DNA from: Histomonas meleagridis 2922-C6/04-290x
Lineage: Eukaryota > Protista > Parabasalia
Reading direction: 5' to 3'
Assembly (NCBI GenBank): GCA_020184695.1
Contig: JAANOX010000258.1
Coordinates: 648,676 to 712,675 of the forward strand
Length of the DNA stretch: 64,000 nucleotides
Positions 28,336 to 49,856 of the stretch are shown here, one piece after another. The stretch's first letter is position 1; every line of letters begins with the position of its first letter. The notes beneath the pieces are model-generated. The model searched no databases. It saw only the letters and a list, made by a program, of their open reading frames with translations, and had not been told where the DNA came from. The translations under genes and the position numbers were made by a program.

Positions 28336-29147
28336 ACACACACACACACAGCGCTATGTGAGCTTCGTGCTACGCACTCGCTCCCACTCGCGCTACATAA
28401 ACTAAAGGATGAACGGCTAAAATCGATTGAATTATCATAAATCTGTTGGTTTTGATTGAAAGTAATAAAATATATTTAAATTCATGATGACATTTATATT
28501 TAAACATGCGTGAGGCATGAATCCGGCTGAGTTGTTGTTAATCCTATGTGGATTTTAGTGTTTTGTTGTTAATCCTATGCTACCTGATAACTTGATATAC
28601 CAGGTAGTTACCAGGTAATATTGCGATTAGCTAAAGGAAATTTAATATTGTTATGTGAGTTTCTCAAATCTTGTGAAATGACGTGAAAATCGTGAGTTTA
28701 CGGGAGCTGCTAACTATAACGGATGAGTTGTTGTTAATGCTATGTGGAAAGTTGTTATTAACTGAGGTTGTGAATGTAAAAAGTACTGTTTAAAATTTCG
28801 AGGGTTAACTTTAACCAAAAAGTGAACCCTCAACGAAACGGAGAAAATGAGCATTTTTTGAAGGCTTTAACGCAAAAAGTTGACGGTTGATTTATCGGAA
28901 TGAATTTAATGTTAATTCTCTGTCGAAAGTTGTAAATTCTATGTGGATTTTAGTGTTTTGAACTTAAAAAGTACCGTTAAAATTTTGAGGGTTAACTTTA
29001 ACCAAAAAGTGAACCCTCAACGAATCGGAGAAAATAAGCATTTTTTGAAGGATTTAACGCAAAAAGAATATGACAAAAAAATAAATTATTTAAACTAAGT
29101 TTTTTAATAATCCGTAATGTTTTATTAATTTTTATAACGTACTTGTA

Positions 29148-29462
29148 CTAAGCTCTATCGCTATATGAAGAAGTATTTTTTAGATTTTCTGACTGATAAA
29201 CCCAACGGAGATTTGAAACGTGATTGTTTGAACGATTGTGATCTATATGATCTATAAAAGGTTTGTCATCAGGATTTGGAATAAATTGTAACGCAACGAT
29301 ACGATGCTTAAGATATAATTTTCTGTTTAATTTACATGCAATATAACCGGTAGTTTTAATTGAAAATTCTTTAATGACTTTTTTATCATTTTTTTGAATT
29401 TCATAAGGGTATTCTGTGTTAATCTCATAATTTCGGTTTACAACGCAAGTTTTCCAACTCAT
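29148..29462 (-). pseudogene. HNH (HNH_3/NUMOD4-type) endonuclease, left-arm copy with ~200-bp internal deletion
   Basis: KHRIVALQFIPNPDDKPFIDHIDHNRSNNHVSNLRWV; lacks the sequence corresponding to 46239-46435. Confidence 0.85.
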
Positions 29463-30450
29463 ATTTTATTAAAAATAAAAAATAAAATTTTTAAAATTAG
29501 CTTTAATTTTTTATTTTGTAAAATCATCCGAAAAATGTAAATTTACTTCTGTTTCGTTGAGGGTTCAAAAAGGGTCACTTTTTATTTTTTTAACCCTCAG
29601 AAATTTTGTGTCACTTTTCGAGTGTCACTTTTTTTGTAAAGGTCGTTGGTTCGAGATACAGCACTATTGAATTTTTTATGGAACCACTTTTTTACAATTT
29701 CAAATAACATGTCTTTTCATAACATTTCCGAAAAATTCATTTCGCATAACATGTTTTTTCATTTCATATCACATGTCAGTTGATGAAAAATTAACGTTCG
29801 TTAGTGATACGTTTACGAAAAATTAACTGACGGAGAAAATGACGATGGATGAATTCGAACAACCGCTGAAAAAGTGAATTGTGAAAAATAAACTTTTTTT
29901 AACGGATTTCAAAAAATTTTTTTTAAACGTTTTCTGTTTAAAATTTAACGGAAATTAACGGACGGAGAAAATGACGGTTGAAGTTGTTGTAAAAAATATT
30001 TTGAATTATAATTTAATTTAATGGCAAATGTAAAATTTTTTGAATTGTCATTTAATTTGGTGGCAAAACGATTAATAATTAAATAGATACTGAAAATGTT
30101 GGCGGAATAGTGATTTGAATGAGTTCTGAAAAAGTTTTTAAAAGTATTGAAATCTTAAAAAAAAATCTGACACGCGTTTCTCGACACAGGAGCATTTTTT
30201 TTTCAATGTTGTAAAAAGTAAAGTATTGAATTATTTTACAATGAAAAAAATTTAGGTGGTAATTGAACGTTAAGGATGAAAAATTGGCGGGCAAAAATGA
30301 TATTTGAATGAGTTCAGAAAACAAGATTTGAATGATGTTTTCAATTAGTGTCAAACGTAAAATTTTTTGAATTGTCATTGAATTTAGTGGCAAATGTAAA
30401 AAATATTTGATGACGAATTTTATGACGGTGTTAATGACGAATAATAAAGT

Positions 30451-30520
30451 GAACGTTAAGGAAGAACGTTAGAGTTGAACGTTAAGGAAGAACGTTAGAG
30501 TTGAACGTTAAGGTAGAACG
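30451..30520 (+). repeat. 26-bp tandem repeat (~2.7 copies) rich in AACGTT palindromes; mirrored at ~44845-44915
   Basis: gaacgttaaggaagaacgttagagtt units. Confidence 0.85.
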
Positions 30521-30694
30521 AGTAAAAAAAGTACAAAAATAAAATTCAATAGGTTTGGGAATCGAACGTAAGACATTAACAAAAAACGCACTGTACGGGA
30601 ATCGAACGTAAGGCGTTCATTGAAAAAGTGAAAAACTGACATTGAAATTTTAAAATAAATTTATCTCGTTACATTATAGTTATTTTTACATGAT

Positions 30695-31190
30695 TTACAT
30701 ATCAAACGATTTCTTGTCGTTTGTATTTTCCGGAAACGTTATTTTTTCTCCTTCAAACTCTTTTGAAATTGCTATATTTTGATTACCAATATATGCATTT
30801 AATGATATAATTCTATTATCGATTTCTTCACGTTTCTCAACAAGTTCGTTTGTGATCTTCTTGACAATATCATTTCTGGCTTTCATAAATCTATTATTTA
30901 ATTCTGCAGGAGCAATATTTACAAGTTTCTTTTCATTTGTTTTAGTAAGAATGTTATCGGTAAACTTTAAATTTACTGATTCAAGAAGTTTTAAATTCTT
31001 ATCATAAAATTTAACGCCTACAAGAATATTATTATGAAGTATAGGTTTTATTTGTTGGTTTGGCTATCTTCACTGTTGTATTATGATTATATTTAAAATC
31101 AACAGCGGCGTAAGGCGTCTTGGCGGAGCAAGACTTGTCTTGCTACTTATTTTTATATTCTGATATTAAATAATCTTGGAATGAATCCAT
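30695..31190 (-). pseudogene. Conserved Maverick hypothetical protein, frameshifted left-arm copy of 44143-44673
   Basis: Same sequence as 44143-44673 with small indels near 31050-31070. Confidence 0.75.
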
Positions 31191-31230
31191 TTATTAACGG
31201 TAAAAAATTTATTTTTATAAATAAAAAATA

Positions 31231-32130
31231 ATGCGAAAAATTTCTTTAAAAGAGGTTGATAAAAAATTTGATGAGATAGAAGAATTGTTTGATAAATTAG
31301 AAAAACAGAACAAAGAAATTTTAGAAAATGCTAAGATAAAACCCATTCATGAAAAATTTTTATTTGCTCAAAACGGAATAACTGCTTTTATAGCGCCGAT
31401 GGGTTCAGGGAAATCATATCTTTACGTTAAACTTGGAGCGAAACAAGAAGTATTATTTAACGAACCGTTTTTCGAACTAATAACTATTTGTAGTACATCC
31501 TCAAAATTTGATGAAACAGTAAATACTTATAAAGAAGCAATAAAGAAAACGAAACTTGTTGCGATAAAAGATACTGATTTGTTAGACTGGATTAATAAAT
31601 ATATTCGGAGAATTTTAAAATATAATTCTATCATTAAATATATCAATTCTGATTTTAAGAAAACGGATGAAGAAGTAGAAAGATTATTTATGAAATATAA
31701 TTTGAATAACTCAAAGAAGAAATTAAAATACATTTCCGAGAAGTTAGCGAAGTATCAATGGAAAACTTATCCGCATAGATGTTTGTTGATATTAGATGAT
31801 TTTGCTAATCATCCTTTGCTGAGAAGTAAAGAAACGGAGATGTCAAGATTACTTAAAAAACTCAGACACTTTAATATTAACGTTATCATTTGTGTGCAAA
31901 CAACAAAAAGTATACCAAAAGATATAAAAAGAACTTTATCAGATATTGTATTATTTAATGGAATTTCAAAAGATGATTTTTATGACTTAATAAAAGAAAG
32001 TCCTGCATCAATATTTGATGTTAATAATTTATGGTCCGTTTATTCTAAACTTCAAAGTCCACACGCAACGTTTAGTATTCACATTAAAGCACGAAGAGTT
32101 ATTATAAATCAAAAAATAAAAGAATCTTAA
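31231..32130 (+). CDS. Maverick packaging ATPase (A32-like, FtsK-HerA superfamily)
   Basis: Walker A APMGSGKS, Walker B LLILDDFA, and LRHFNINVIICVQ motif followed by IP..IK. Confidence 0.9.
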   Translation: MRKISLKEVDKKFDEIEELFDKLEKQNKEILENAKIKPIHEKFLFAQNGITAFIAPMGSGKSYLYVKLGAKQEVLFNEPFFELITICSTSSKFDETVNTYKEAIKKTKLVAIKDTDLLDWINKYIRRILKYNSIIKYINSDFKKTDEEVERLFMKYNLNNSKKKLKYISEKLAKYQWKTYPHRCLLILDDFANHPLLRSKETEMSRLLKKLRHFNINVIICVQTTKSIPKDIKRTLSDIVLFNGISKDDFYDLIKESPASIFDVNNLWSVYSKLQSPHATFSIHIKARRVIINQKIKES

Positions 32131-32190
32131 GATTCGGAACGGCTCTCTGAGCCTGAGCTCCTTCGGAGCGAAACAATGTTTCATAAAAAT

Positions 32191-32926
32191 TCATTTTTGA
32201 TTTTGAATCTCACCGACAAATAAATCTTCATCCTGTATGCCTTGAACAGAAATTGTTATATACATTGGATTCAGTAAATGTACTTCGTGAAGGTTTGCGT
32301 CAACGAGTGTCAACTGTATATGTGACAAATCATTAGAATTTATGTCAATTTCAAAATCAGCGTTTGATACAATAATCGGAAAATTTGCCGAAAAAGAGTT
32401 ATTGATTCTAAGAACGATTTTTGAAATGTTAATGGTTTCGTTTAAATTTCTATAAGAACTTTTTCCAACATTCGACAAAAGATATAATACTGGAGTTGAT
32501 AAAGTATTTCCGACTGATTCAGCGAATATTTCAAAGGATCCTTTGGGATCCCCGGCGCCAGAGCGCCATGTATCTGTACCATTAAGGCTCTCAGAGCCGG
32601 GTGCAGGGCACCATGTTGATGGTATAGGAAGAATTTGTGAGTATAATCCTGATATTTGAATTATATTATATGAAGCATTATTTATTGTAAAGGCATTTGA
32701 AGAAGTAAATACAATTCTACCGGCTTCGTCGACTTCAGACGTAACGCCTGATTCTTGAATTAATAAAATCATCTTTCTCAATAACAACAATAGAACATTT
32801 AGTCGTTAACGATGTTACAATCATTTTTGCTTGACGTGTTGGCGGTGACGGTAAGTTTACGTCAATTCTATTGTAATGTTCAGCGTCGTAGGAAGAAATT
32901 GTATAATCAATTACTGCATTATACAT
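32191..32926 (-). pseudogene. Putative minor capsid (penton-like) protein 1, left copy with ~80-bp deletion
   Basis: MYNAVID...; C-terminal FEIDINSNDLSHIQLTLVDANLHEVHLLNPMYITISV resembles the Polinton penton C-terminus (inference). Split into track ORFs 32735-32926 and 32191-32790. Confidence 0.5.
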
Positions 32927-33298
32927 TTTATATATTGTAAAAATTTATGAATAACATATATAAAAAATTCAAGGGTTAAAAAATCACAAAAAGTTAACCT
33001 TTCAGTAACTCGAGCAAACATGCAATATTCATGTCAAATCATTCGAAAAACGCTAATTTACTCGGATTCGTTGAGGGTTCACTTTTTGGTTAAAGTTAAC
33101 CCTCAAAAATTTAATGATACTTTTTTAACATTTTAATTTATGTAAAATGTTTTTTATTGGTGTTTGGATGTGTGTTATTGGAACCATTTACGTTTTAAAT
33201 TCAATCGTAAATACAATGATAAAAATATATGTTGTATTTAACGAAGAGGAAGGAGATAAAAAAGAAATCCCTGAAGATATTAAAAGGTCACTTTACTC

Positions 33299-34118
33299 TT
33301 AAAGTACAACAGTTTTTCTGTAATTATAAAGAAATACTAATTGAATAATAAACCTGCAATATTTCGGATAAATATTATTTTTACCGTTTGTTGTAAATCT
33401 AATGTTAAATGTTGAGCCATCAGTTGGCGCGTTATATAATACAGTAGGTTTTTCATAAAAATCACCTTTGATGCCAATGAATCGTCTCTTCGAATCACTA
33501 AATGAAGCATGAAATTCTAAATACTCTCTGTTCCAAACATTATTAAAAGTCATTACTTCCGTTTGAGTTGACAAATAACTTATACTTTCTGACGTTACAT
33601 CTTGATTTAAGAATTTCAAAAAACTTTCTAAATTAGATGTAGTACTTCCTGAATCAACAATCGCAAATTTTGCGACAAGATTTTGGCTTTCATCCGAGCC
33701 TACATAAGTACAAGCAAAATATAAATTGCCTGAGTCTTCGTATTCATAAGATAATCTATAACTCGCAAATGAATTATTAAAACTATTACAAATTGACGTT
33801 AAAATTTCAAATAAAGTATTTTGCGCCATAACTTGAATTTTAATGATACGTGGATTAGGTGAAGAACCACTGACGCTTTCAGGTTTAGTTACTTCAAACT
33901 GTAATGAGAAAAACGTGAGCGGTCGGCGTTATATCTAATCTTCTTATGCCAATAGCTTTATTCTGTGACGGAGACTCTAACCAACGTTGAGGATAACGGA
34001 AAGTATAACCATTTTGAGGATTTAATACTTCATACTTATCTAAATCAAGATTTGTATAATTTTCTTCAATCGGTAACTGAGACGCAGTTGTTGTAAATTG
34101 ATTTTCAGTTTTATACAT
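33299..34118 (-). pseudogene. Putative minor capsid/jelly-roll-like protein 2 (MYKTENQF...), single +1 frameshift
   Basis: Track ORFs 33894-34118 and 33299-33829 join if GTTTTTCTC loses one T (AHVFSLQFEVTKPES); the outer element copy is in frame here. Structural assignment is inferred. Confidence 0.5.
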
Positions 34119-34134
34119 TTTTATCTTATTAAAA

Positions 34135-36832
34135 ATGTCAAATTCACAGTTTGAAAAAATTGAAAATATAGTTAGAGCATTAATGAATAAAAACAGTGTT
34201 GTATACAGTAATCATTCAAAAACATCTGATACATTATCAAATGGTATATGTACATTACAGATAAATAGTTATGACAAATCATTTGTTTTCACTTACGGAA
34301 GAAATCATGTTGTAATATCACCGTTAGATAATAGTATAAAAAATTTAAAGTATATCAATAATAATATTAAAGTTGATGATATACTTACTGGAGAAAATAT
34401 AATGAAAAATGCATATATAATTGAAATGTTCGGTAATATAAATAAAGTATTGGATTTATATAAACAATTCGTAAAAATCAATGAAGATAGTAATAATGTT
34501 TCAATTACAAATTTAATTATTGATACCATTAATGGTTATTCAACAGATGATTTTGCATTAAAAAATCATACACATGAAATTATTAATAATGATTTAGCTA
34601 TTAATGGAAGTTTAGTTGCAAACACCATTAACGGATATTATATTTCAAACAGTATTGAGGAGGTTCTAATTCAACAGTAAATATTCCATCAATCGCGACT
34701 ATTAAATCAGATGGATTCATGGAAGTCGGTGAGTATATTGTTTTTCATTATAGAGATGATTATAATAAAGATAATACGTGGAGAATTAGAGCAATAACCG
34801 ATACATTAAGTTTTCAAGCAAAAGGTGGAAGTACAATTAGTTTTAATAATAACGGTAATATAACAGTAAATAGTATTAATGGTATTTCTACAAATGATAT
34901 ATCACTAACGACGCATAATCACGACGACAAATACTCTCCGTTAAATCATATTCATAGTGATTATCTAACTAATGCTAACTTAGAAAGTATTAATCATAAA
35001 TTAACAGGAATATATTATAATGAAGAAACAATTATCAATGAAGAAGAAGAAGAGGATATTACTGAAAAATATACTTTAATAAATCAAGATCTTATAGTTA
35101 ATGGTACGATTAATGATATTAACACAGAAGAAATAGCTTTAGTTCGAGACGGAATTTTATCTACCGGAGACGTTATATCATTTGAAAACGGAGTCAGTAT
35201 ATCAACTTATGATAATACTACTGATGAAGGAATTACTGAAAATAATTTATTAATAAATTTTCCTAATGGTAATAGTATCATGTTAGAGGATAGCGGACAT
35301 ACTTATGGTATAATTAATAATGATGGAGAATTAAAAACAGAATACTATTTAACAAAACAAATGATCATTGATGATGAAGACATACAAGAAATTTTAATGG
35401 GACCTCCAGGAGAAGACGGTGAATCCACATATAAAGAAAGTTTTGTTGATAGTATATTTGATATAATAGATACATTTTTTACAGCTGCTGATACAGCATA
35501 TACTATAGCTCAAATTGTAAGTCAAATAAAAAATTTTGGGTGGGCAGGATTTTTATATAATAGTTTTGGGATTAATGTTATGAAGTCAAAAGGTTATTTA
35601 ACCGTTACCATCATTGAAATCAGTAGTTTTTGATGAATATGATATATCGACAGGTGGAATGTTGGAAGATTTAGAAGTTCCAAACGCTGAAGATATTGAC
35701 CAAGAATTTAATGAATATAATTATTTAATAAATCTATTTCCTGAAATGAATATTATATTTAAAAATTTGAAGTATTATTATAAAGACGTCTCTAAAGGTC
35801 AAAGAACAAATGAATTAGGTCTTTTATTAGTCGATTGTCAGATATATAAACGCTTCGTTAATCATAAACATGATAATTATTTAATAGCTGCTGATTTAAA
35901 TAATTATACAGGAATAACTTATCATAAAGATTTATTAGAAACTAATGAAGAGGAGGAAGAAATATATGAAATCTACACGTCAATTAATCAAGATTTAAAG
36001 GTTAATGGATCGCTGATCTCCGATAGCTTTAGCTGTCGCGGTAATGTTGAATGTACAACAATTAATGGTATTGATTTAGATGAATTATCTGTTATCAGTA
36101 ATGATATATTTAATATTAACAATAAATTAACAGGTATTACTTTTAATAAAGATTATGTCGAAACAAATGAAGAAGAAGATATTTATGAAATTTACACGTC
36201 AATTAATCAAGATTTAAAAATAAATGGTAATATAGAATGTACAACTATTAATGGTATTGATACTAATAACTTTTCTTTAACAAATCATACTCACAATCAA
36301 TATTTAACTAATGATAATTTAACTGATATAAATAAGGCTTTAACAGGAATATCATATAATGAATATGGCGATTGGACTAAGATTGAACAAGATTTATTAG
36401 TAGGTAATGATATTTCATGTAGAATATTGACAGCAAGTCGTAATATTAATATTGATTGTAGTAAATATTCAGATGATACAAATATTTATGGGGGATTGTT
36501 TATTCATAGAACTAATGCAATGCCGGGTGATTCTATTAGGATGGAAATAGGTGTATTGCCTTATGGAGATGATTGTAGCGTAATAGAACATTACGTAGGT
36601 TCTGATGATAATATTGATACTTGTCTAAGATTCAAAGTTTGTGATGGCAATTATGTAAGTATATATAAAAATGGTAATATTAGTTGTAATAGTATTAATG
36701 GAATTGATACTAATAATATTTCATTAACAACACATAATCATGATGATAAATATTCTTTATTAAATCATAATCATACAGAATTTAATAATGCTATTACTAT
36801 TAATGGTGAACTTATTGTAAATAGTGATATAT
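34135..36832 (+). pseudogene. Fibre-like virion protein, 3'-truncated left-arm copy
   Basis: Track ORFs 34135-34680, 34719-35633 and 35614-37128 join by single-base indels; homology to the right-arm gene stops at 36832. Confidence 0.75.
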
Positions 36833-37128
36833 ATTTTGATATAAAGAAAATAAATGAAAATATTGACGAAGAAATAGAAACTGCAAAAATTCATTTAAAT
36901 GAATTATATATTCAGTTACTGATTACTTTTATTGTAGAAAATGATTTAATAGAAAAATCACCATTAGAAATTTGTAAACAATATTTAGAAATTAACGAAC
37001 CGAAGGATAAAAGAAGTAAAAAGAATAAAAATATTATTGCAGAACAACATAAAAAAATAAATGAAGTGTTAATTTATGTGAATGAATCATTAAAAAGAAT
37101 TCGCGATATTATTGCCGAAACGGCATAA
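36833..37128 (+). other. Orphan 3' end of an unidentified gene, fused in frame to the truncated fibre gene
   Basis: 97 codons (DIKKINENIDEEIETAKIHLNELY...RIRDIIAETA*) with no counterpart in either arm; converges on the fibre gene stop at 37143. Confidence 0.65.
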
Positions 37129-37142
37129 AATGCCTTGAGGCT

Positions 37143-40100
37143 CTAAGAGCTGAATACAGCTAACAGAGAATCAGATATAATAGCGGTGACTTTTCCAATA
37201 ATCATATTATTTATTTTTGCCGTTAATGGTGTTTCGTCATCTAATATAGTTTCATCATAAAGCACTGTATCGCCAATATTATATTTTGATGAATCAGTAA
37301 CTTTAAAATAATAATCTCCGTGAGTTGCAAAATCAATTGTATCTTGATTAATCGATATGTCTTGTTTAATTGTGTCTCCTATTTGAAAAATTTCACCAGA
37401 GTTATGTTTTGATGTACAAATTCCGATAAATTCTTTATAAGTTCCTGATGATTTAACACTAGGAATACAATTAGTAGAATCAGTAACTGAAGTATAATTA
37501 TTATTATTTAATTTATATACGTTACCTGTTATAAATACAGGAGAGCCAATATCAAAATCATTTAATGTTAATGTTTCGTCTATCGGCGCATTATGCACAA
37601 TAGTTTTATTAATCTGACCTCCACCACTACTTGATATAATAGCTTTTCTGTATGTACCATCTGATATATGCCAAAATCCTAATTCATTTTCATATGATGC
37701 TATACGCCAAGTATAAATACCTGGTGCTTCTGTTGAATTATTATGAAAAACGAAAACAAAAAATCTTCCTTTGTTTAATACAGAAGTTTTGATAAGGAAC
37801 AATATCAGCAGGTTGATGAGTATGAGATGATGGAGTAAATGTTGATGGTTTATCAGTAATATCATTATAACTATGAGTATGTGTATTTAAAGAAAAATTA
37901 TTAACAGGTATATCATTAATAGAAATACAATTTATATTACCATCAATTCCATTGAAACTAATAACACCATCATTATTATCAAGTTTACCGAAATACATAA
38001 CATTGCCGGCAGTTCTTATTCTCCAAGAATAATCACTATTTAAATCATTATTATCATGAAAGTCAATATATTGTCCAACTTCCATTACACCATCTGATTT
38101 AATAGTCGCGATTGATGGAATATTTACTGTTGAATTAGAACCTCCTCCAATACTGTTTGAAATATAATATCCGTTAATGGAATTTGCGACAAGACTACCA
38201 TTAATAGCTAAATCATTATTAATAATTTCATGTGTATGATTTAACGAAGAGTATTTATCGTCATGATTATGTGTTGTTAATGAGTATTCATTATGAGTAT
38301 GATTTAACGAAGAGTATTTATCATCATGATTATGTGTTGTTAATGAATATTCATTATGTGTATGATTTAACGAAGAGTATTTATCATCATGATTATGTGT
38401 TGTTAAAGAATATCTTTCGTCATGATTATGATATTTTAATGAGAATTCTTCAGGTATTTTTCCATTAATTGTTTCACAATATAAATTACCATTAACATTT
38501 AAATCATTATCAATAGTATCATGAGTATGATTTTTTAATGAGAAATTATCAACAGAAATATTATTAATAGAAATACAATTTATATTACCATCAATAAATA
38601 TATCACTATTTACAATAAGTTCACCATTAATAGTAATAGCATTATTAAATTCTGTATGATTATGATTTAATAAAGAATATTTATCATCATGATTATGTGT
38701 TGTTAATGAAATATTATTAGTATCAATTCCATTAATACTATTACAACTAATATTACCATTTTTATATATACTTACATAATTGCCATCACAAACTTTGAAT
38801 CTTAGACAAGTATCAATATTATCATCAGAACCTACGTAATGTTCTATTACGCTACAATCATCTCCATAAGGCAATACACCTATTTCCATCCTAATAGAAT
38901 CACCCGGCATTGCATTAGTTCTATGAATAAACAATCCCCCATAAATATTTGTATCATCTGAATATTTACTACAATCAATATTAATATTACGACTTGCTGT
39001 CAATATTCTACATGAAATATCATTACCTACTAATAAATCTTGTTCAATCTTAGTCCAATCGCCATATTCATTATATGATATTCCTGTTAAAGCCTTATTT
39101 ATATCAGTTAAATTATCATTAGTTAAATATTGATTGTGAGTATGATTTGTTAAAGAAAAGTTATTAGTATCAATACCATTAATAGTTGTACATTCTATAT
39201 TACCATTTATTTTTTTAAATCTTGATTAATTGACGTGTAGATTTCATATATTTCTTCCTCTCCATTTGTAGAGACATAATATATAGTAAAAAGTAATACC
39301 TGTTAATTTATTGTTAATATTAAATATATCATTACTGATAACAGATAATTCATCTAAATCAATACCATTAATTGTTGTACATTCAACATTACCGCGACAG
39401 CTAAAGCTATCGGAGATCAGCGATCCATTAACCTTTAAATCTTGATTAATTGACGTGTAGATTTCATATATTTCTTCCTCCTCTTCATTAGTTTCTAATA
39501 AATCTTTATGATAAGTTATTCCTGTATAATTATTTAAATCAGCAGCTATTAAATAATTATCATGTTTATGATTAACGAAGCGTTTATATATCTGACAATC
39601 GACTAATAAAAGACCTAATTCATTTGTTCTTTGACCTTTAGAGACGTCTTTATAATAATACTTCAAATTTTTAAATATAATATTCATTTCAGGAAATAGA
39701 TTTATTAAATAATTATATTCATTAAATTCTTGGTCTATATCTTCAGCGTTTGGAACTTCTAAATCTTCCAACATTCCACCTGTCGATATATCATATTCAT
39801 CAAAAACTACTGATTTCAATGATGGTAACGGTAAATAACCTTTTTGACTTCATAACATTAAACCCCAAAACTATTATATAAAAATCCTGCCCACCCAAAA
39901 TTTTTTATTTGACTTACAATTTGAGCTATAGTATATGCTGTATCAGCAGCTGTAAAAAATGTATCTATTATATCAAATATACTATCAACAAAACTTTCTT
40001 TATATGTGGATTCACCGTCTTCTCCTGGAGGTCCCATTAAAATTTCTTGTATGTCTTCATCATCAATGATCATTTGTTTTGTTAAATAGTATTCTGTTTT

Positions 40101-41301
40101 TAATTCTCCATCATTATTAATTATACCATAAGTATGTCCGCTATCCTCTAACATGATACTATTACCATTAGGAAAATTTATTAATAAATTATTTTCAGTA
40201 ATTCCTTCATCAGTAGTATTATCATAAGTTGATATACTGACTCCGTTTTCAAATGATATAACGTCTCCGGTAGATAAAATTCCGTCTCGAACTAAAGCTA
40301 TTTCTTCTGTGTTAATATCATTAATCGTACCATTAACTATAAGATCTTGATTTATTAAAGTATATTTTTCAGTAATATCTTCTTCTTCTTCATTGATAAT
40401 TGTTTCTTCATTATAATATATTCCTGTTAATTTATGATTAATACTTTCTAAGTTAGCATTAGTTAGATAATCACTATGAATATGATTTAACGGAGAGTAT
40501 TTGTCGTCGTGATTATGCGTCGTTAGTGATATATCATTTGTAGAAATACCATTAATACTATTTACTGTTATATTACCGTTATTATTAAAACTAATTGTAC
40601 TTCCACCTTTTGCTTGAAAAATTAATGTATCGGTTATTGCTCTAATTCTCCACGTATTATCTTTATTATAATCATCTCTATAATGAAAATCAATATACTC
40701 ACCGACTTCCATGACTCCATCTGATTTAATAGTCGCGATTGATGGAATATTTACTGTTGAATTAGAACCTCCTCCAATACTGTTTGAAATATAATATCCG
40801 TTAATGGTGTTTGCAACTAAACTTCCATTAATAGCTAAATCATTATTAATAATTTCATGTGTATGATTTTTTAATGCAAAATCATCTGTTGAATAACCAT
40901 TAATGGTATCAATAATTAAATTTGTAATTGAAACATTATTACTATCTTCATTGATTTTTTTACGAATTGTTTATATAAATCCAATACTTTATTTATATTA
41001 CCGAACATTTCAATTATATATGCATTTTTCATTATATTTTCTCCAGTAAGTATATCATCAACTTTAATATTATTATTGATATACTTTAAATTTTTTATAC
41101 TATTATCTAACGGTGATATTACAACATGATTTCTTCCGTAAGTGAAAACAAATGATTTGTCATAACTATTTATCTGTAATGTACATATACCATTTGATAA
41201 TGTATCAGATGTTTTTTTGAATGATTACTGTAAACAACACTGTTTTTATTCATTAATGCTCTAACTATATTTTCAATTTTTTCAAACTGTGAATTTGACA
41301 T
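37143..41301 (-). pseudogene. Full-length fibre/tailspike-like gene (~1,380 codons after correcting indels)
   Basis: Track ORFs 39858-40712, 39244-39819, 37741-39003 and 37143-37865 plus the 5' part from ATG 41301. Repeated THNHDDKY, I.C..INGI and MEVG(E/Q)YIDFH...WRIR modules. Confidence 0.75.
38229..38415 (-). repeat. 63-bp (21-aa) His-rich coding repeat x3
   Basis: YSLTTHNHDDKYSSLNHTH(NE); atgatttaacgaagag recurs at 38236, 38299 and 38362. Confidence 0.9.
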
Positions 41302-41317
41302 TTTTAATAAGATAAAA

Positions 41318-42139
41318 ATGTATAAAACTGAAAATCAATTTACAACAACTGCGTCTCAGTTACCGATTGAAGAAAATTATACAAATCTTGATTTAGATAA
41401 GTATGAAGTATTAAATCCTCAAAATGGTTATACTTTCCGTTATCCTCAACGTTGGTTAGAGTCTCCGTCACAGAATAAAGCTATTGGCATAAGAAGATTA
41501 GATATAACGCCGACCGCTCACGTTTTTCTCATTACAGTTTGAAGTAACTAAACCTGAAAGCGTCAGTGGTTCTTCACCTAATCCACGTATCATTAAAATT
41601 CAAGTTATGGCGCAAAATACTTTATTTGAAATTTTAACGTCAATTTGTAATAGTTTTAATAATTCATTTGCGAGTTATAGATTATCTTATGAATACGAAG
41701 ACTCAGGCAATTTATATTTTTGCTTGTACTTATGTAGGCTCGGATGAAAGCCAAAATCTTGTCGCAAAATTCGCGATTGTTGATTCAGGAAGTACTACAT
41801 CTAATTTAGAAAGTTTTTTGAAATTCTTAAATCAAGATGTAACGTCAGAAAGTATAAGTTATTTGTCAACTCAAACGGAAGTAATGACTTTTAAATAATG
41901 TTTGGACCAGAGAGTCTTAAGAATTTCATGCTTCATTTAGTGATTCGAAGAGACGATTCATTGGCATCAAAGGTGATTTTTTTAACAAACCATCTGTCTT
42001 ATATAACGCGCCAACTAATGGCTCAACATTTAACATTAGATTTACAAAAAAAAAAAAAAATAATATTTATCCGAAATATTGCAGGTTTATTATTCAATTA
42101 GTATTTCTTTATAATTACAGAAAAACTGTTGTACTTTAA
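41318..42139 (+). pseudogene. Right-arm copy of putative capsid-like protein 2
   Basis: Mirror of 33299-34118, with the same GTTTTTCTC frameshift and additional indels. Confidence 0.7.
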
Positions 42140-42523
42140 GAGTAAAGTGACCTTTTAATATCTTCAGGGATTTCTTTTTTATCTCCTTCCTCTTCGTTAA
42201 ATACAACATATATTTTTATCATTGTATTTACGATTGAATTTAAAACGTAAATGGTTCCAATAACACACATCCAAACACCAATAAAAAACATTTTACATAA
42301 ATTAAAATGTTAAAAAAGTATCATTAAATTTTTGAGGGTTAAAAAAATAAAAAAATGAACCCTTTTTCTAACCCTCAACGAATCCGAGTAAATTAGCGTT
42401 TTTCGGGTGATCTGACGTGAATATTGCATGTTTGCTCGAGTTACTGAAAGGTTCACTTTTTTGTGTTTTTTTAACCCTTGAATTTTTTATATATGTTTTT
42501 CATAAATTTTTACAATATATAAA

Positions 42524-43174
42524 ATGTATAATGCAGTAATTGATTATACAATTTCTTCCTACGACGCTGAACATTACAATAGAATTGACGTAAACTTACC
42601 GTCACCGCCAACACGTCAAGCAAAAAAATGATTGTAACATCGTTAACGACTAAATGTTCTATTGTTGTTATTGAGGAAGATGTTTTTATACAGATTAACG
42701 GTAAAAAATACTATTTCAATAATGATTACACTGACTTAAACTCTCAAACGTTTATATTACTGTTGAATTCTTTAATTCAAGAATCAGGCGTTACGTCTGA
42801 AGTCGACGAAGCCGGTAGAATTGTATTTACTTCTTCAAATGCCTTTACAATAAATAATGCTTCATATAATATAATTCAAATATCAGGGTTATACTCACAA
42901 ATTCTTCCTATACCATCAACATGGTGCCCTGCACCCGGCTCTGAGAGCCTTAATGGTACAGATACATGGCGCTCTGGCGAATTTTCCGATTATTGTATCA
43001 AACGCTGATTTTGAAATTGACATAAATTCTAATGATTTGTCACATATACAGTTGACACTCGTTGACGCAAACCTTCACGAAATACATTTACTGAATCCAA
43101 TGTATATAACAATTTCTGTTCAAGGCATACAGGATGAAGATTTATTTGTCGGTGAGATTCAAAATCAAAAATGA
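42524..43174 (+). pseudogene. Right-arm copy of putative penton-like protein 1 with ~170-bp deletion
   Basis: Mirror of 32191-32926; deletion between two GGC trinucleotides (left coordinates ~32387-32556). Confidence 0.7.
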
Positions 43175-43235
43175 ATTTTTTATGAAACATTGTTTCGCTC
43201 CGAAGGAGCTCAGGCTCAGAGAGCCGTTCCGAATC

Positions 43236-44102
43236 TTAAGATTCTTTTATTTTTTGATTTATAATAACTCTTCGTGCTTTAATGTGAATACTAAACGTTG
43301 CGTGTGGACTTTGAAGCTTAGAATAAACGGACCATAAATTATTAACATCAAATATTGATGCAGGACTTTCTTTTATTAAGTCATAAAAAAATCATCTTTT
43401 GAAATTCCACTTTTGGTATACTTTTTGTTGTTTGCACACAAATGATAACGTTAATATTAAAGTGTCTGAGTTTTTTAAGTAATCTTGACATCTCCGTTTC
43501 TTTACTTCTCAGCAAAGGATGATTAGCAAAATCATCTAATATCAACAAACATCTATGCGGATAAGTTTTCCATTGATACTTCGCTAACTTCTCGGAAATG
43601 TATTTTAAATTTCTTCTTTGAGTTATTCAAATTATATTTCATAAATAATCTTTCTACTTCTTCATCCGTTTTTCTTAAAATCAGAATTGATATATTTGAT
43701 GATAGAATTATATTTTAAAATTCTCCGAATATATTTATTAATCCAGTCTAACAAATCAGTATCTTTTATCGCAACAAGTTTCGTTTTCTTTATTGCTTCT
43801 TTATAAGTATTTACTGTTTCATCAAATTTTGAGGATGTACTACAAATAGTTATTAATTCAAAAAACGGTTCGTTAAATAATACTTCTTGTTTCGCTCCAA
43901 GTTTAACGTAAAGATATGATTTCCCTGAACCCATCGGCGCTATAAAAGCAGTTATTCCGTTTTGAGCAAATAAAAATTTTTCATGAATGGGTTTTATCTT
44001 AGCATTTTCTAAAATTTCTTTGTTCTGTTTTTCTAATTTATCAAACAATTCTTCTATCTCATCAAATTTTTTATCAACCTCTTTTAAAGAAATTTTTCGC
44101 AT
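43236..44102 (-). pseudogene. Right-arm copy of packaging ATPase (frameshifts, ~37-bp deletion)
   Basis: Identical N-terminal 140 aa including Walker A, then frameshifted. Confidence 0.85.
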
Positions 44103-44142
44103 TATTTTTTATTTATAAAAATAAATTTTTTACCGTTAATAA

Positions 44143-44673
44143 ATGGATTCATTCCAAGATTATTTAATATCAGAATATAAAATTAAGTCGCAAGACAAGT
44201 CTTGCTCCGGCAAGACGCCTTACGCCGCTGTTGATTTTAAATATAATCATAATACAACAGTGAAGATAGACAAACCAACAAATAAACCTATACTTCATAA
44301 TAATATTCTTGTCGGCGTTAAATTTTATGATAAGAATTTAAAACTTCTTGAATCAGTAAATTTAAAGTTTACCGATAACATTCTTACTAAAACAAATGAA
44401 AAGAAACTTGTAAATATTGCTCCTGCAGAATTAAATAATAGATTTATGAAAGCCAGAAATGATATTGTCAAGAAGATCACAAACGAACTTGTTGAGAAAC
44501 GAGAAGAAATTGACAATAGAATTATATCATTAAATGCTTACGTTGGAAATGAGAGTATAGCGATTTCAAAAGAGTTTGAAGGCTTAAAAATAACTTTCCC
44601 GGGAAGCGAGCACACGCGAGCATCGAGCCTTCAGGCGAAGACTACAAACGACAAGAAATCGTTTGATATGTAA
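44143..44673 (+). CDS. Conserved Maverick hypothetical protein (176 aa)
   Basis: Intact ORF; homologs at 30695-31190 and, more diverged, at 48738-49220. Confidence 0.8.
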   Translation: MDSFQDYLISEYKIKSQDKSCSGKTPYAAVDFKYNHNTTVKIDKPTNKPILHNNILVGVKFYDKNLKLLESVNLKFTDNILTKTNEKKLVNIAPAELNNRFMKARNDIVKKITNELVEKREEIDNRIISLNAYVGNESIAISKEFEGLKITFPGSEHTRASSLQAKTTNDKKSFDM

Positions 44674-45921
44674 ATTATATAAAAATAACTATCACATGAC
44701 GAGATATTTTAATTTTTAAATTTCAATGTCAGTTTTTCACTTTTTCAATGAACGCCTTACGTTCGATTCCCGTACAGTGCGTTTTTTGTTAATGTCTTAC
44801 GTTCGATTCCCAAACCTATTGAAATTTATTTTTGAACTTTTTACTCGTTCTACCTTAACGTTCAACTCTAACGTTCTTCCTTAACGTTCGACTCTAACGT
44901 TCTTCCTTAACGTTCACTTTATCCTTCGTCATAAACACCGTCATAAAATTCGTCATCAAATATTTTTTACATTTGCCACTAAATTCAATGTCAATTCAAA
45001 AAATTTTACGTTTGACACTAATTGAAAACATCATTCAAATCTTGTTTTCTGAACTCATTCAAATATCATTTTTGCCCGCCAATTTTTCATCCTTAACGTT
45101 CAATTACCACCAAAATTTTTTTCATTGTAAAATAATTCAATACTTTACTTTTTACAACATTGAAAAAAAAATGCTCCTGTGTCGAGAAACGCGTGTCAGA
45201 TTTTTTTTAAGATTTCAATACTTTTAAAAACTTTTTCAGAACTCATTCAAATTCATTTCCCGCCAATATTTTCAGTACCTATTCAATTATTAATCGTTTT
45301 GCCACCAAATTAAATGACAATTCAAAAAATTTTACATTTGCCATTAAATTAAATTATAATTCAAAATATTTTTTACAACAACTTCAACCGTCATTTTCTC
45401 CGTCCGTTAATTTCCGTTAAATTTTTAAACAGAAAACGTTTAAAAAAAATTTTTTGAAATCCGTTAAAAAAAGTTTATTTTTCACAATTCACTTTTTCAG
45501 CGGTTGTTCGAATTCATCCATCGTCATTTTCTCCGTCAGTTAATTTTTCGTAAACGTATCACTAACGAACGTTAATTTGATATCAACTGACATGTTATAT
45601 GAAATGAAAAGACATGTGATATGAAATGAAAAGACATGTGATATGAAATGATTTTTCGGAAACGACATGTGAAAATGAAAAACAGAAATGTTATGTGAAA
45701 TGTTTATATAAAAGTGACACAGACATGTGATATGAAAATTTACACAAAAAGTGACACTCGAAAAGTGACACAAAATTTCTGAGGGTTAAAAAAATAAAAA
45801 AGTGAACCCTTTTTTTGAACCCTCAACGAAACGAAGTAAATTAACATCTTTCGGATGATTTTACAAAATAAAAAATTAAAGCTAATTTTAAAAAAATTTA
45901 ATTTTTTATTTTTAATAAAAT

Positions 45922-46484
45922 ATGAGTTGGAAAACTTGCGTCGTAAACCGAAATTATGAGATTAACACAGAATACCCTTATGCCATTAGAAGAAAAAATG
46001 ATAAAAAAATCATTAAAGAATTTTCAATTAAAACTACCGGTTATATTGCATGTAAATTAAACAGAAAATTATATCTTAAACATCGTATTGTTGCATTTAC
46101 AATTTATTCCAAATCCTGATGACAAACCTTTTATAGATCATATAGATCACAATCGTTCAAACAATCACGTTTCAAATCTCCGTTGGGTTTATCAGTCAGA
46201 AAATCTAAAAAATACTTCTTCATATAGCGATAGAGCTTTTGAATTCTTCGACGAAATCAATGAAGATTCAATTGAAGTTTTTAGAATACGGTAACCATAA
46301 ATTTAAAGATTATTATTATGATCCTGAGCTTGATTCTTTCTTCTTCTGGAACGACATTAAATTTAGAAAATTAACAATCTGTTATGATAAGCGCGGTTTG
46401 GCATTTGTTAGAGCGTATGACGTGAATCATAAAAAAGTACAAGTACGTTATAAAAAATTCATGAAACTTTACGGATTATTATAA
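45922..46484 (+). pseudogene. HNH endonuclease, full-length right-arm copy with frameshifts
   Basis: Three overlapping track ORFs (45922-46119, 46088-46294, 46239-46484) join to ~187 aa. Confidence 0.85.
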
Positions 46485-46860
46485 AACTTAGTTTAAATAA
46501 TTTATTTTTTTGTCATATTCTTTTTGCGTTAAATCCTTCAAAAAATGCTTATTTTCTCCGATTCGTTGAGGGTTCACTTTTTGGTTAAAGTTAACCCTCA
46601 AAATTTTAACGGTACTTTTTAAGTTCAAAACACTAAAATCCACATAGAATTTACAACTTTCGACAGAGAATTAACATTAAATTCTTTCCGATAAATCAAC
46701 CGTCAACTTTTGCGTTAAAGCCTTCAAAAAAATGCTCATTTTCTCCGTTTCGTTGAGGGTTCACTTTTTGGTTAAAGTTAACCCTCGAAATTTTAAACAG
46801 TACTTTTTACATTCACAACCTCAGTTAATAACAACTTTCCACATAGCATTAACAACAACT

Positions 46861-47500
46861 CATCCGTTATAGTTAGCAGCTCCCGTAAACTCACGATTTT
46901 CACGTCATTTCACAAGATTTGAGAAACTCACATAACAATATTAAATTTCCTTTAGCTAATCGCAATATTACCTGGTAACTACCTGGTATATCAAGTTATC
47001 AGGTAGCATAGGATTAACAACAAAACACTAAAATCCACATAGGATTAACATCAAAACACAACATTCGACATAGAATTTACAACTCATCCGTTATAGTTAG
47101 CAGCTCCCGTAAACTCACGATTTTCACGTCATTTCACAAGATTTGAGAAACTCACATAACAATATTAAATTTCCTTTAGCTAATCGCAATATTACCTGGT
47201 AACTACCTGGTATATCAAGTTATCAGGTAGCATAGGATTAACATCAAAATACTAAAATCCACATAGGATTAACATCAAAACACAACATTCGACATAGAAT
47301 TTACAACTCATCCGTTATAGTTAGCAGCTCCCGTAAACTCACGATTTTCACGTCATTTCACAAGATTTGAGAAACTCACATAACAATATTAAATTTCCTT
47401 TAGCTAATCGCAATATTACCTGGTAACTACCTGGTATATCAAGTTATCAGGTAGCATAGGATTAACAACAAAACACTAAAATCCACATAGGATTAACAAC
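46861..47500 (+). repeat. 224-bp unit x3 in the right subterminal region (one copy in the left arm)
   Basis: catccgttatagttagcagctccc starts at 46861, 47085 and 47309. Confidence 0.92.
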
Positions 47501-47697
47501 AACTCAGCCGGATTAATGCCTCACACATTTTAAATATAAATGTCATCATGAATTTAAATATATTTTATTACTTTCAATCAAAACCAACAGATTTATGATA
47601 ATTCAATCGATTTTAGCCGTTCATCCTTTAGTTTATGTAGCGCGAGTGGGAGCGAGTGCGTAGCACGAAGCTCACATAGCGCTGTGTGTGTGTGTGT

Positions 47698-49220: not shown

Positions 49221-49856
49221 TTTGGTGGAACTGGGCGCTGATGGAGCAGCTTTGTCTGCGACTCGAATCAAATTTATTTTTCCCATTAATGGGAATAATG
49301 AGTTACTCATAACTTTCGTCCTTTTATTTTTATTCAAAACTCCAGGCTTAACTTCTGGCATTCAATTATGACTCATTATTGAAGAATTATGTGTTAAAAG
49401 TCATACCTACACTTTTTATGTGATTTACACGTTGAAACTTATGAAAAAACAGTGTTTTCAGTGATTTTCGAAACTAATGGAATGATCATTTTTTTGTTCA
49501 GCTCTGGCGTTCAATTTTGACTCATTTTTGGAGGATTCTGCAACCGACACATGTATCAGATAGAATGACGCTTTCTAAACCTTCAGACATTTTTTGGTTC
49601 AGCTTTGTCATCACTAAAAATCATGAAAACCGCTCACAAATGAACCATAAATGCTTGATTACCTGATGAAAAATAAAATGAGGCGCACATCAAAACAAAC
49701 ATAAATGATTGATGACTTGATGTAAAATAGTGAGTAAAACAAATGGGTATCATATGGTAGCGACGCAGGAGCGGACCAAAACACACGTTCGGGTAACATC
49801 TATGATCAGCTTAGCCGAGGCGATGCATATCACGCTAAGGCGAATAATATGCTGTA

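What the first reader, a model, noticed from the sequence alone, without database searches (positions are those of the whole stretch)
28336..47697. A 19.4-kb Maverick-like element that is almost entirely a fold-back: a copy-back defective genome fixed in the chromosome
SEEN: arms of 8,497 bp (28336-36832) and 9,100 bp (38598-47697) are inverted copies around a 1,765-bp unique core. The ends are (AC)n-GCGCTATG and are flanked by a perfect 5-bp TSD (AAAGC). Every gene is duplicated except the fibre 3' end and an orphan gene tail. No pPolB, integrase, protease or recognisable major capsid ORF is present. ESTABLISHED: Mavericks normally have TIRs of hundreds of bp, simple-repeat termini suited to protein-primed replication, a 5-6 bp TSD, and encode pPolB and integrase. 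INFERENCE: replication from one end switched template near 36832/38598 and copied back, replacing the half carrying the replication and integration genes. The product kept both termini and was integrated in trans, like copy-back defective-interfering viral genomes.
Basis: partly seen in the sequence, partly recalled or inferred. Interest (0 to 1): 0.8.

Follow-up and report, generated by a model that had tools for sequence, protein, structure and literature searches.

The report
Fold-back defective Polinton-like element in Histomonas
A 19.4-kb virus-like insertion in the genome of the poultry parasite Histomonas meleagridis consists of one half of its family's genome copied twice in mirror image; the half that should carry the DNA polymerase and integrase is missing, so it is a rare chromosomal record of a defective "copy-back" DNA virus genome.

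Summary
Arms 28336-36840 and 38590-47697 are inverted copies around a 1.75-kb core. The ends are (AC)n-GCGCTATG, and a paralogous uninterrupted site confirms the 5-bp AAAGC duplication. The window is Histomonas meleagridis (GCA_020184695.1). The element sits inside an older, decayed copy of the same family. Each arm carries an HNH endonuclease, a 153-aa-type gene, an A32/FtsK ATPase, a penton protein (identified by fold), a 49-aa-type gene, a 268-aa-type gene and a fibre-like gene. The core holds the fibre 3' part and an almost complete small gene, not a gene tail. A non-fold-back copy at another locus (L018, about 98% identical) continues past the small gene into DUF3839, a Pox_A22 resolvase and a family B DNA polymerase. 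Another copy end (L019) carries an rve integrase and shares only about 0.4-0.6 kb of terminal repeat. So the missing half holds the replication and integration genes, and there is a single novel junction at a 10-nt (9/10) microhomology. Copy-back before integration is the most economical origin (about 0.6). A rearrangement after integration is not excluded (about 0.25). Most genes are broken in one or both arms, though some breaks may be nanopore errors. I rate it a new variant of a known kind.

The parts
28336..47697 (.). Whole fold-back element (19,362 bp)
   Evidence: Bounded by the terminal motif and the 5-bp TSD. The flanks are colinear in an older copy.
28331..28335 (.). Target-site duplication AAAGC, left copy
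47698..47702 (.). Target-site duplication AAAGC, right copy
28336..36840 (+). Left arm. It is the inverted copy of the right arm and ends at the only novel junction.
38590..47697 (-). Right arm. It is colinear with the core and with the non-fold-back copy L018.
   Evidence: L018 4198-14631 matches window 36831-47697.
36841..38589 (.). Unique core: a small gene lacking its start, plus the 3' part of the fibre-like gene
36831..36840 (.). Junction microhomology. A 10-nt stretch is shared at 9 of 10 positions by the fibre gene (opposite strand) and the 5' end of the small gene in L018.
28336..28755 (+). Left terminal inverted repeat proper. This is the part also shared with the integrase-side end in L019.
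47282..47697 (-). Right terminal inverted repeat proper
46855..47526 (.). 224-bp subterminal tandem repeat: 2.9 copies here, a single copy in the left arm at about 28500-28731
29148..29462 (-). HNH_3 endonuclease gene remnant, left arm (broken)
   Evidence: Pfam HNH_3 6.5e-11 and PHROG HNH; break counts.
45885..46485 (+). HNH_3 endonuclease gene, right arm (broken)
30698..31190 (-). 153-aa-type conserved gene of unknown function, left arm (broken)
   Evidence: tblastn with the L001, L008 and L011 homologues.
44143..44673 (+). 153-aa-type conserved gene, right arm (intact 176-aa ORF)
31231..32130 (+). A32/FtsK-type packaging ATPase, left arm (intact, 299 aa)
   Evidence: Pfam Pox_A32 1.1e-08; 530 homologues.
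43251..44135 (-). A32/FtsK-type packaging ATPase, right arm (broken)
32191..32926 (-). Penton (minor capsid) gene, left arm (broken)
   Evidence: Homologues. The model of the family matches the mavirus, Sputnik and adenovirus pentons.
42524..43174 (+). Penton (minor capsid) gene, right arm (broken)
33147..33299 (+). 49-aa-type small gene, left arm
42139..42291 (-). 49-aa-type small gene, right arm
33299..34118 (-). 268-aa-type gene of unknown function, left arm (broken)
41318..42133 (+). 268-aa-type gene, right arm (broken)
34135..36840 (+). Fibre-like repeat gene, left copy. It is cut off at the arm boundary and there runs in frame into the small gene.
37143..41277 (-). Fibre-like repeat gene, full-length copy (right arm plus core). 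Its C-terminal domain is 52% identical to the C-terminus of the 1,223-aa protein of L001.
36841..37128 (+). Small gene (relatives are 107-111 aa), convergent with the fibre gene. It is 5'-truncated at the arm boundary.
   Evidence: P0140, 59% identity, 2.8e-21; same arrangement in L015, L016, L017 and L018.
26836..28335 (.). Older decayed copy of the same family, left part (fibre 5' part and most of the 268-aa-type gene)
47698..49222 (.). Older decayed copy, right part (rest of the 268-aa-type gene, 49-aa gene, penton, ATPase remnant, 153-aa-type gene)

Best explanation
This is a defective, non-autonomous derivative of a Maverick/Polinton-type endogenous virus of Histomonas meleagridis. Full members of the family have terminal repeats of only about 0.4-0.6 kb. 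Their gene order is: terminus, HNH, 153-aa gene, ATPase, penton, 49-aa gene, 268-aa gene, fibre, then a convergent small gene, DUF3839, A22 resolvase, family B DNA polymerase, further genes, integrase, terminus. While a linear genome was being copied from the ATPase-side end, the growing strand had just passed the fibre gene and nearly all of the small gene. It then left its template at a 10-nt microhomology and resumed on the complementary strand inside the fibre gene. It copied that strand back to the natural end of the template. A variant of the same idea is that two genomes lying in opposite orientation were joined at that microhomology. The product has two identical ATPase-side ends and is close to genome size at 19.4 kb. 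It lacks the polymerase, resolvase, integrase and the candidate major capsid gene. An integrase supplied by another copy inserted it as one unit, making a 5-bp duplication, into an older copy of the same family. It has since decayed. Shown: the architecture, the single junction and its microhomology, the identity of the missing half, the single insertion, and the decay. Inferred: that the switch occurred during replication before integration, and that integration was in trans.
For: The arms, termini and TSD are confirmed, and an empty-site paralogue has one AAAGC. Only two terminal motifs occur in 64 kb. L018, another locus in the sister-strain assembly, is about 98% identical to the core plus right arm from window 36831 to 47697. 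It has no inverted repeat of 80 nt or more. It continues upstream into the intact start of the small gene, DUF3839, Pox_A22 (2e-15) and the conserved 761-770-aa protein. The model of that protein (pLDDT 82.7) matches only family B DNA polymerases. L019, in the same assembly as the window, has an element end with an rve integrase (34.8 bits, cut-off 32.6). It shares only about 590 bp of terminus with the window. The metagenomic relatives L001, L008, L010 and L011 have 15-17 unique genes and no long inverted repeats. The right arm/core boundary is colinear with L018, so there is only one novel junction, and it lies in a 9/10 microhomology. None of the missing genes is found in the window at E<=1. 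Copying back on a linear template ends exactly at the terminus without any further event. Strand-displacing phi29 polymerase makes mostly inverted chimeras primed at 2-21-nt complementarities (PMC1855051). Poxvirus ITR expansions replace one genome end by an inverted copy of the other (PMC10230479).
Against: Only one copy with this junction is known: one in the window and none in JGI metagenomes. The host genome could not be searched as a whole. No episomal form has been seen. The polymerase matched RNA-primed family B enzymes best, and relatives also encode a D5-like primase-helicase, so protein-primed strand displacement is not shown. The arms are not equally distant from L018. The right arm carries four clustered patches of private substitutions. 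A simple self-copy followed by equal decay does not predict that. It needs gene conversion, two slightly different parental genomes, or polishing errors.
Confidence: 0.6

Rival explanations
1. Rearrangement after integration. An ordinary full-length element integrated here. Later a break or collapsed fork near the start of the small gene was repaired by fold-back priming at the same microhomology. Synthesis ran along the element's own ATPase-side half, and the new strand re-annealed through the terminal repeat to the left end. This replaced the polymerase-integrase half.
For: It gives exactly the same final sequence: one microhomology junction, and intact outer termini and TSD. Outside the patches, arm-to-arm divergence is about 0.4%, somewhat lower than arm-to-L018 divergence at about 0.6%. 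That allows a duplication younger than the family's last burst. An HNH endonuclease gene inside the element is a conceivable source of breaks.
Against: It needs several coordinated steps: loss or resection of 8 kb or more on one side, more than 8 kb of synthesis, and capture through a 0.4-0.6-kb repeat. Ordinary chromosomal fold-back inversions also duplicate the flank in mirror image, and here the flanks are unique and colinear. The product is near genome size (19.4 kb, against 15-22-kb relatives), which this route does not predict.
Confidence: 0.25
2. Assembly artefact. The Flye assembly of nanopore reads threaded a repeat wrongly, or incorporated a template-complement chimeric read, and so created a false palindrome.
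For: The assembly is nanopore-based with Illumina polishing (PMC8529796). Of the 42 arm-to-arm indels, 19 are 1-2-nt homopolymer differences typical of such data. I could not inspect reads, or the central 5 kb in the sister assembly.
Against: The fold-back lies in the interior of a 713-kb contig. It has unique flanks, correct termini and a verified TSD. The arms differ by large indels, by repeat copy number and by substitution patches, so they are two physical sequences. The junction lies at a microhomology and not at a long repeat where an assembler could switch paths.
Confidence: 0.06
3. Two independent elements inserted head to head, or one inside the other, with later loss of the inner ends.
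For: Nested insertion does occur in this family: the element itself sits in an older copy, and L019 shows another such case. The arms are not identical.
Against: There are no internal termini or internal TSD. The outer flanks join perfectly in a paralogue with one AAAGC, so both outer ends came from one integration. The right arm/core boundary is the normal continuous gene.
Confidence: 0.04
4. A natural long-TIR genome type of this family, not a defect.
For: Linear DNA viruses such as poxviruses tolerate ITRs of many kilobases.
Against: L018, L019 and all the metagenomic relatives lack long repeats. The element has no polymerase, integrase or candidate major capsid gene. The junction truncates two genes.
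Confidence: 0.03

Closest known systems
Maverick/Polinton elements (polintoviruses), including those of Trichomonas vaginalis
   Same: Size is 15-22 kb, with short TIRs and a 5-bp TSD. The family has an rve integrase, a family B DNA polymerase, an A32/FtsK ATPase and a penton protein. Copies are integrated in a parabasalid genome and nest in one another.
   Different: The window's copy has none of the replication or integration genes, and its 'TIRs' are 8.5-9.1 kb. The family also encodes a D5-like primase-helicase (DUF5906/VapE) and a Pox_A22 resolvase. No adenain-like protease was found, and there was no match to the DUF4106 capsid family reported for T. vaginalis Mavericks (PMC10120064). 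Protein priming is not shown.
Polinton-like viruses (PLVs) and virophages
   Same: The penton fold is closest to mavirus and Sputnik and to PLV/adomavirus/MELD pentons. The primase-helicase is typical of PLVs. Close relatives are found mainly as metagenomic contigs of 15-22 kb.
   Different: PLVs usually lack a PolB plus rve pair. No giant-virus association is known here. The sources are gut and animal-associated metagenomes, not aquatic ones.
Copy-back / snap-back defective viral genomes
   Same: One genome end is present at both termini in mirror image. There is a single junction to the complementary strand, essential genes are lost, and the element depends on a helper.
   Different: These genomes are described mostly for negative-strand RNA viruses, with some DNA virus cases (review PMC13506859). 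Here the genome is DNA and is preserved as a chromosomal insertion. Interference with a helper is untested.
Poxvirus ITR expansion / terminal transposition
   Same: One end of a linear dsDNA genome is deleted and replaced by an inverted copy of the other end through non-homologous recombination (PMC10230479).
   Different: Poxvirus variants remain viable because only non-essential terminal genes are lost. Here about half the genome is replaced, including the polymerase.
Inverted chimeras made by phi29 DNA polymerase in strand-displacement synthesis
   Same: These are inverted junctions with an intervening deletion, primed at 2-21 nt of complementarity and mostly intramolecular (PMC1855051).
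   Different: That is an in-vitro reaction. It is a mechanistic analogy only.
Chromosomal fold-back inversions (breakage-fusion-bridge palindromes)
   Same: They have a microhomology-primed inverted duplication with a short unique spacer.
   Different: They copy the flank as well and yield unstable chromosomes. Here the duplication stops exactly at the element's termini and the flanks are single-copy.

Membership tests
Maverick/Polinton | Terminal inverted repeats of tens to hundreds of bp | tested here: met
   The terminal ~420-590 bp are shared by both window ends and by the integrase-side end in L019, and the terminal motif is identical.
Maverick/Polinton | 5-6-bp target-site duplication | tested here: met
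   AAAGC lies on both sides. The flanks overlap by exactly 5 nt on the older copy, and a paralogous uninterrupted site has one AAAGC.
Maverick/Polinton | Family B DNA polymerase encoded by the element | tested here: not met
   It is absent from the window element. It is present in the family: the 761-803-aa protein of L001, L011, L016 and L018 has a family B polymerase fold.
Maverick/Polinton | The polymerase is protein-primed | not testable with these tools
   There is no Pfam DNA_pol_B_2 match. The best structural matches are RNA-primed family B enzymes. The dinucleotide-repeat termini are only suggestive.
Maverick/Polinton | Retroviral-type (rve) integrase | tested here: not met
   It is absent from the window element. 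It is present in the family: an L019 ORF scores 34.8 bits (cut-off 32.6), and the L011 homologue is 59% identical.
Maverick/Polinton | FtsK/A32-type packaging ATPase | tested here: met
   Pox_A32 1.1e-08. The gene is intact in the left arm.
Maverick/Polinton | Penton (minor jelly-roll capsid) protein | tested here: met
   The family model (pLDDT 65, pTM 0.56; only moderate confidence) matches the mavirus penton 6g41/6g42 (2e-05), Sputnik 3j26_N, the adenovirus penton base and adomavirus LO5.
Maverick/Polinton | Double jelly-roll major capsid protein | tested here: not met
   No gene of suitable size or similarity lies in the window element. A ~530-560-aa protein conserved in L001, L008 and L011 is a candidate, but its fold was not tested.
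Maverick/Polinton | Adenain-like maturation protease | tested here: inconclusive
   There is no Pfam or PDB sequence match for any element protein, including the conserved 153-aa-type protein. Its fold was not tested.
Copy-back defective viral genome | Both termini are mirror copies of one genome end | tested here: met
   Both arms are the ATPase-side half when compared with L018 and L019.
Copy-back defective viral genome | A single junction to the complementary strand | tested here: met
   The right arm/core boundary is colinear with L018. Only the left arm/core boundary is novel.
Copy-back defective viral genome | Loss of genes needed for autonomous replication | tested here: met
   Polymerase, resolvase, integrase, helicase and the candidate capsid gene are all absent.
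Copy-back defective viral genome | Generated during genome replication and existing as a free molecule | not testable with these tools
   No reads or episomal contigs were available. A junction search in JGI metagenomes found nothing.
Chromosomal fold-back inversion | The mirror duplication extends into flanking host DNA | tested here: not met
   The flanks are unique and colinear across the insertion.

The most novel reading that the evidence does not exclude
The 8.5-kb mirror arms, if transcribed through the core, would give a long hairpin RNA covering the ATPase, penton and fibre genes. The locus would then act as a heritable source of small RNAs that silences active members of its own virus family. 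In that case a defective copy-back genome has been co-opted as host immunity, like hairpin-RNA or piRNA-cluster loci. Small RNAs against Mavericks are reported in Trichomonas vaginalis (PMC7845603, title and abstract only). Nothing here tests transcription or small RNAs in Histomonas.
Probability: 0.08. Interest if true: 0.85.

Novelty: new variant of a known kind. Interest (0 to 1): 0.55.

Why it matters
Mavericks/Polintons and their relatives are thought to be viruses, but evidence that they replicate as free linear genomes is largely indirect. A copy-back genome that ends exactly at the natural termini and was integrated as one unit would be a sequence-level trace of that replication. It would also show an integrase acting in trans on a genome that encodes none. 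The work also shows that Histomonas meleagridis harbours an undescribed family that combines Polinton genes (PolB, rve integrase, ATPase, penton) with PLV- and poxvirus-like genes (D5-type helicase, A22 resolvase). The genome paper lists only about 0.2% DNA transposons for this species. Many relatives of the family occur in gut metagenomes.

Tried and rejected
1. I first read the minus-strand ORFs at 32191-34118 as pieces of one major capsid gene. Comparison with L001 showed three separate genes: the penton, the 49-aa gene and the 268-aa-type gene.

2. I suspected a gradient of arm identity toward the centre. Finer binning showed near-identity everywhere, apart from the terminal 2.5 kb and four patches private to the right arm. 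The patches do not match the older copies in hand and remain unexplained.

3. Several searches found nothing:
- IMG/VR with the ATPase and with the terminal motif.
- The junction 33-mer in JGI metagenomes.
- Exact look-ups of the window's ATPase and of the SCAMP neighbour.

4. P0121, a short 'member' of the ATPase cluster, led to unrelated bacterial contigs.

5. Sequence searches of PDB with the penton family, the polymerase family and the 153-aa-type protein gave nothing. Only fold comparison worked.

6. The adenovirus defective-genome paper cited by a review (Daniell and Mullenbach 1978) is not held, so that parallel rests on my own knowledge.

7. I could not fetch the central 5 kb of the locus from the sister assembly, or the part of L018's element beyond its first base.

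8. Possible slip: tblastn tables printed by my scripts list alignment bounds per reading frame, and these incidentally bracket frame changes.

Full report
**Observation**

The window holds two long inverted arms, 28336-36840 and 38590-47697, around a unique core.
The next 8 nt match at 6 of 8 positions.
- A global alignment of the arms gives 1.85% substitutions and 42 indel events. The right arm is about 600 bp longer, mostly from two extra copies of a 224-bp subterminal repeat.
- The ends are (AC)7-AGCGCTATG and its reverse complement. That motif occurs only at these two places in the 64 kb.
- AAAGC flanks both ends.

The duplication could be tested because the element lies inside an older, 25-30% diverged copy of the same family (26836-28335 and 47698 to about 49222).
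- The two flanks map to adjacent positions of the younger element with exactly 5 nt of overlap.
- A paralogous uninterrupted copy elsewhere in the same genome (L019 9090-9160) has one AAAGC at that site.
- So the 19,362-bp unit is a single insertion with a true 5-bp target-site duplication.

**Host**

- The neighbouring genes are intronless. They include BspA-type LRR, DUF3447-ankyrin, succinyl-CoA synthetase beta, a PEP-utilising enzyme and a nucleoside hydrolase.
- Window 14217-35101 is 100% identical to Histomonas meleagridis GCA_020184695.1, contig JAANOX010000258.1.
- That genome is a nanopore plus Illumina Flye assembly of 43 Mb with 28.7% G+C. Its paper reports only about 0.2% DNA transposons and does not mention Mavericks (PMC8529796).

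**Gene content of the arms, from the terminus inward**

- An HNH_3 endonuclease.
- A conserved 153-aa-type gene.
- A Pox_A32/FtsK-type ATPase.
- A 243-aa-type gene.
- A 49-aa-type gene.
- A 268-aa-type gene.
- A long fibre-like repeat gene.

The 243-aa-type family was modelled from 23 homologues (pLDDT 65, pTM 0.56). It matches the mavirus penton (6g41/6g42), the Sputnik penton, the adenovirus penton base, and adomavirus and MELD-virus pentons. It is the minor capsid protein.

**The core**

- It holds the 3' 1.45 kb of the fibre gene. The C-terminal domain is 52% identical to that of the 1,223-aa protein of relative L001.
- An exhaustive profile search showed this is a nearly complete small gene. 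Relatives are 107-111 aa, the best at 59% identity and E = 2.8e-21.
- In three metagenomic relatives and in L018 the same small gene lies convergent with the fibre 3' end.
- The window copy lacks only its start. At the arm boundary it runs in frame out of the truncated left fibre copy.

**The family**

The ATPase has 530 unnamed homologues. Almost all come from metagenome assemblies, including human-gut samples.
- Contigs of 15-22 kb (L001, L008, L010, L011) carry 13-17 unique genes. They have no inverted repeat beyond short chance matches of 45 nt or less at 70-81% identity.
- They encode an rve integrase and a D5-like helicase (DUF5906/VapE).
- They encode a conserved 586-803-aa protein. Its model (pLDDT 82.7) matches only family B DNA polymerases.
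- They encode a conserved ~540-aa protein that is an untested major-capsid candidate.

Two further Histomonas loci are decisive.

L018 lies at another locus in the sister-strain assembly.
- It is about 98% identical to the window from 36831 to 47697, that is the core plus right arm.
- It has no inverted repeat of 80 nt or more.
- It continues upstream into the intact start of the small gene, a DUF3839 gene, a Pox_A22 resolvase and the polymerase.

L019 is in the same assembly as the window.
- It shows an element end with the integrase about 2 kb from a terminus identical to the window's.
- Only the last ~590 bp are shared.

Normal members therefore have 0.4-0.6-kb terminal repeats and two different halves. 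The window element is made of two ATPase-side halves. Nothing in the window resembles the polymerase, resolvase, DUF3839, integrase, helicase or capsid candidate at E<=1.

**The junction**

- The right arm/core boundary is simply the continuous fibre gene, as in L018. The left arm/core boundary is therefore the only novel junction.
- There, the fibre sequence read on the opposite strand and the 5' end of the small gene share a 10-nt stretch at 9 of 10 positions.
- One microhomology-guided strand switch explains the whole structure.

**Decay**

Counts are minimum breaks against intact relatives.

| Gene | Left arm | Right arm plus core |
|---|---|---|
| HNH | one stop and an internal deletion | two frameshifts |
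| 153-aa type | one frameshift and one stop | intact |
| ATPase | intact | three frameshifts |
| Penton | one frameshift | two frameshifts |
| 49-aa type | intact | intact |
| 268-aa type | one frameshift | one stop and an internal loss |
| Fibre | at least four frame changes, and truncated | at least four frame changes |
| Small gene | not present | 5'-truncated |

- The fibre's frame changes are also seen in L018, so they may partly reflect its natural organisation.
- In L018 the penton has one frame change. The DUF3839 and polymerase genes are each split over at least three frames.
- Caveat: 19 of the 42 arm-to-arm indels are 1-2-nt homopolymer differences. These are typical nanopore errors, so some breaks may not be real.

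**Relationship of the arms**

In a three-way comparison (left arm, right arm, L018), the three are almost identical over 30.8-36.8 kb. The exception is four clusters of substitutions private to the right arm.
- Outside those clusters the arms differ by about 0.4%, and each differs from L018 by about 0.6%.
- In the terminal 2 kb, L018 is much more divergent.
- The clusters do not match the older copies available.
- They may be gene-conversion tracts from unseen copies, a sign of two slightly different parents, or polishing errors. I leave them unexplained.

**Mechanism**

The most economical origin is a copy-back on a free linear genome. Synthesis that started at the ATPase-side end passed the fibre gene and most of the small gene. 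It then switched at the microhomology to the complementary strand and ran back to the template's natural end.
- This yields two perfect termini at once.
- The product is close to genome size.
- A variant is an illegitimate join between two genomes in opposite orientation, as proposed for poxvirus ITR expansion (PMC10230479).
- Strand-displacing phi29 polymerase makes mainly such inverted, microhomology-primed chimeras in vitro (PMC1855051).
- Integration then required an integrase from another copy.

A repair event after integration could produce the same sequence. That would involve fold-back priming at the same microhomology and capture through the terminal repeat. It needs more steps and does not predict the size, but I cannot exclude it.

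| Origin | Estimated probability |
|---|---|
| Copy-back or inverted join before integration | about 0.6 |
| Rearrangement after integration | about 0.25 |
| Assembly artefact | about 0.06 |
| Two insertions | about 0.04 |
| Natural long-TIR form | about 0.03 |

**Classification and novelty**

The family fits the Maverick/Polinton pattern in its TIRs, 5-bp TSD, PolB, rve integrase, ATPase and penton. It also carries PLV- and poxvirus-like genes (D5-type helicase, A22 resolvase).
- Protein priming, a double jelly-roll capsid and a protease are not shown.
- The window copy itself fails the polymerase and integrase criteria. It is best called a defective derivative of that family.
- I found no report of a fold-back or copy-back Polinton among the papers searched.

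I rate it a new variant of a known kind, of moderate interest.

Some of my script outputs list per-frame alignment bounds that bracket frame changes. I give only counts here.

Noticed in passing
window 26836-28335 and 47698-49222: An older, heavily decayed copy of the same family (about 70-77% nucleotide identity to the young element) is the target of the insertion. L019 shows a second case of a young element end abutting an older-type copy, so nesting within the family may be frequent or preferred.
   Followed up: partly
window right arm, opposite left-arm bins starting 30586, 32836, 33336 and 36086: There are four clusters of substitutions private to the right arm. Elsewhere the left arm, right arm and L018 are almost identical. 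The clusters are not explained by the older copies in hand. Gene conversion, two parental genomes or polishing errors are possible.
   Followed up: partly
window 29148-29462 and 45885-46485; L007 943-1506: The HNH_3 endonuclease gene sits near the terminus in the Histomonas copies. In a metagenomic relative whose ATPase is 96% identical at the protein level it lies between the ATPase and penton genes. It behaves like a mobile homing-endonuclease gene inside these elements.
   Followed up: partly
window 32191-33299 compared with L001 10893-11821: The segment with the penton and 49-aa genes is inverted relative to the metagenomic relative L001. The penton has the same orientation in the older window copy and in L019's older-type copy, and the 49-aa gene also does in the older window copy, so this is a lineage difference in gene order.
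   Followed up: partly
L016 2474-2977; L018 2608-3165: Relatives encode a Pox_A22-type Holliday-junction resolvase next to the polymerase. This is unusual for Polintons and hints at concatemer or hairpin intermediates in replication.
   Followed up: no
window 5679-6594 and 13821-14616: About 170-bp AT-rich satellite arrays lie next to two paralogous DUF3447-ankyrin genes (6881-8146 and 14802-15965). This looks like a local segmental duplication.
   Followed up: no
window 9994-10442: Six and a half copies of a 69-bp repeat (95% matches) lie inside the alpha/beta-hydrolase ORF 9704-11725.
   Followed up: no
window 60648-61982 (minus strand): An ORF has a Herpes_UL52-type primase domain. It is probably a host PrimPol-like gene and not part of a viral element. 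No family proteins match the 55-64-kb region.
   Followed up: partly
P0150 (L019 9554-10207): The penton homologue of the older-type copy is named 'DNA methyltransferase' in the public Histomonas annotation. Fold evidence for the family indicates a penton protein, so the name looks wrong.
   Followed up: partly
window 2673-2744: A tRNA-Val (AAC) gene lies far from the element and is unrelated to its insertion site.
   Followed up: no
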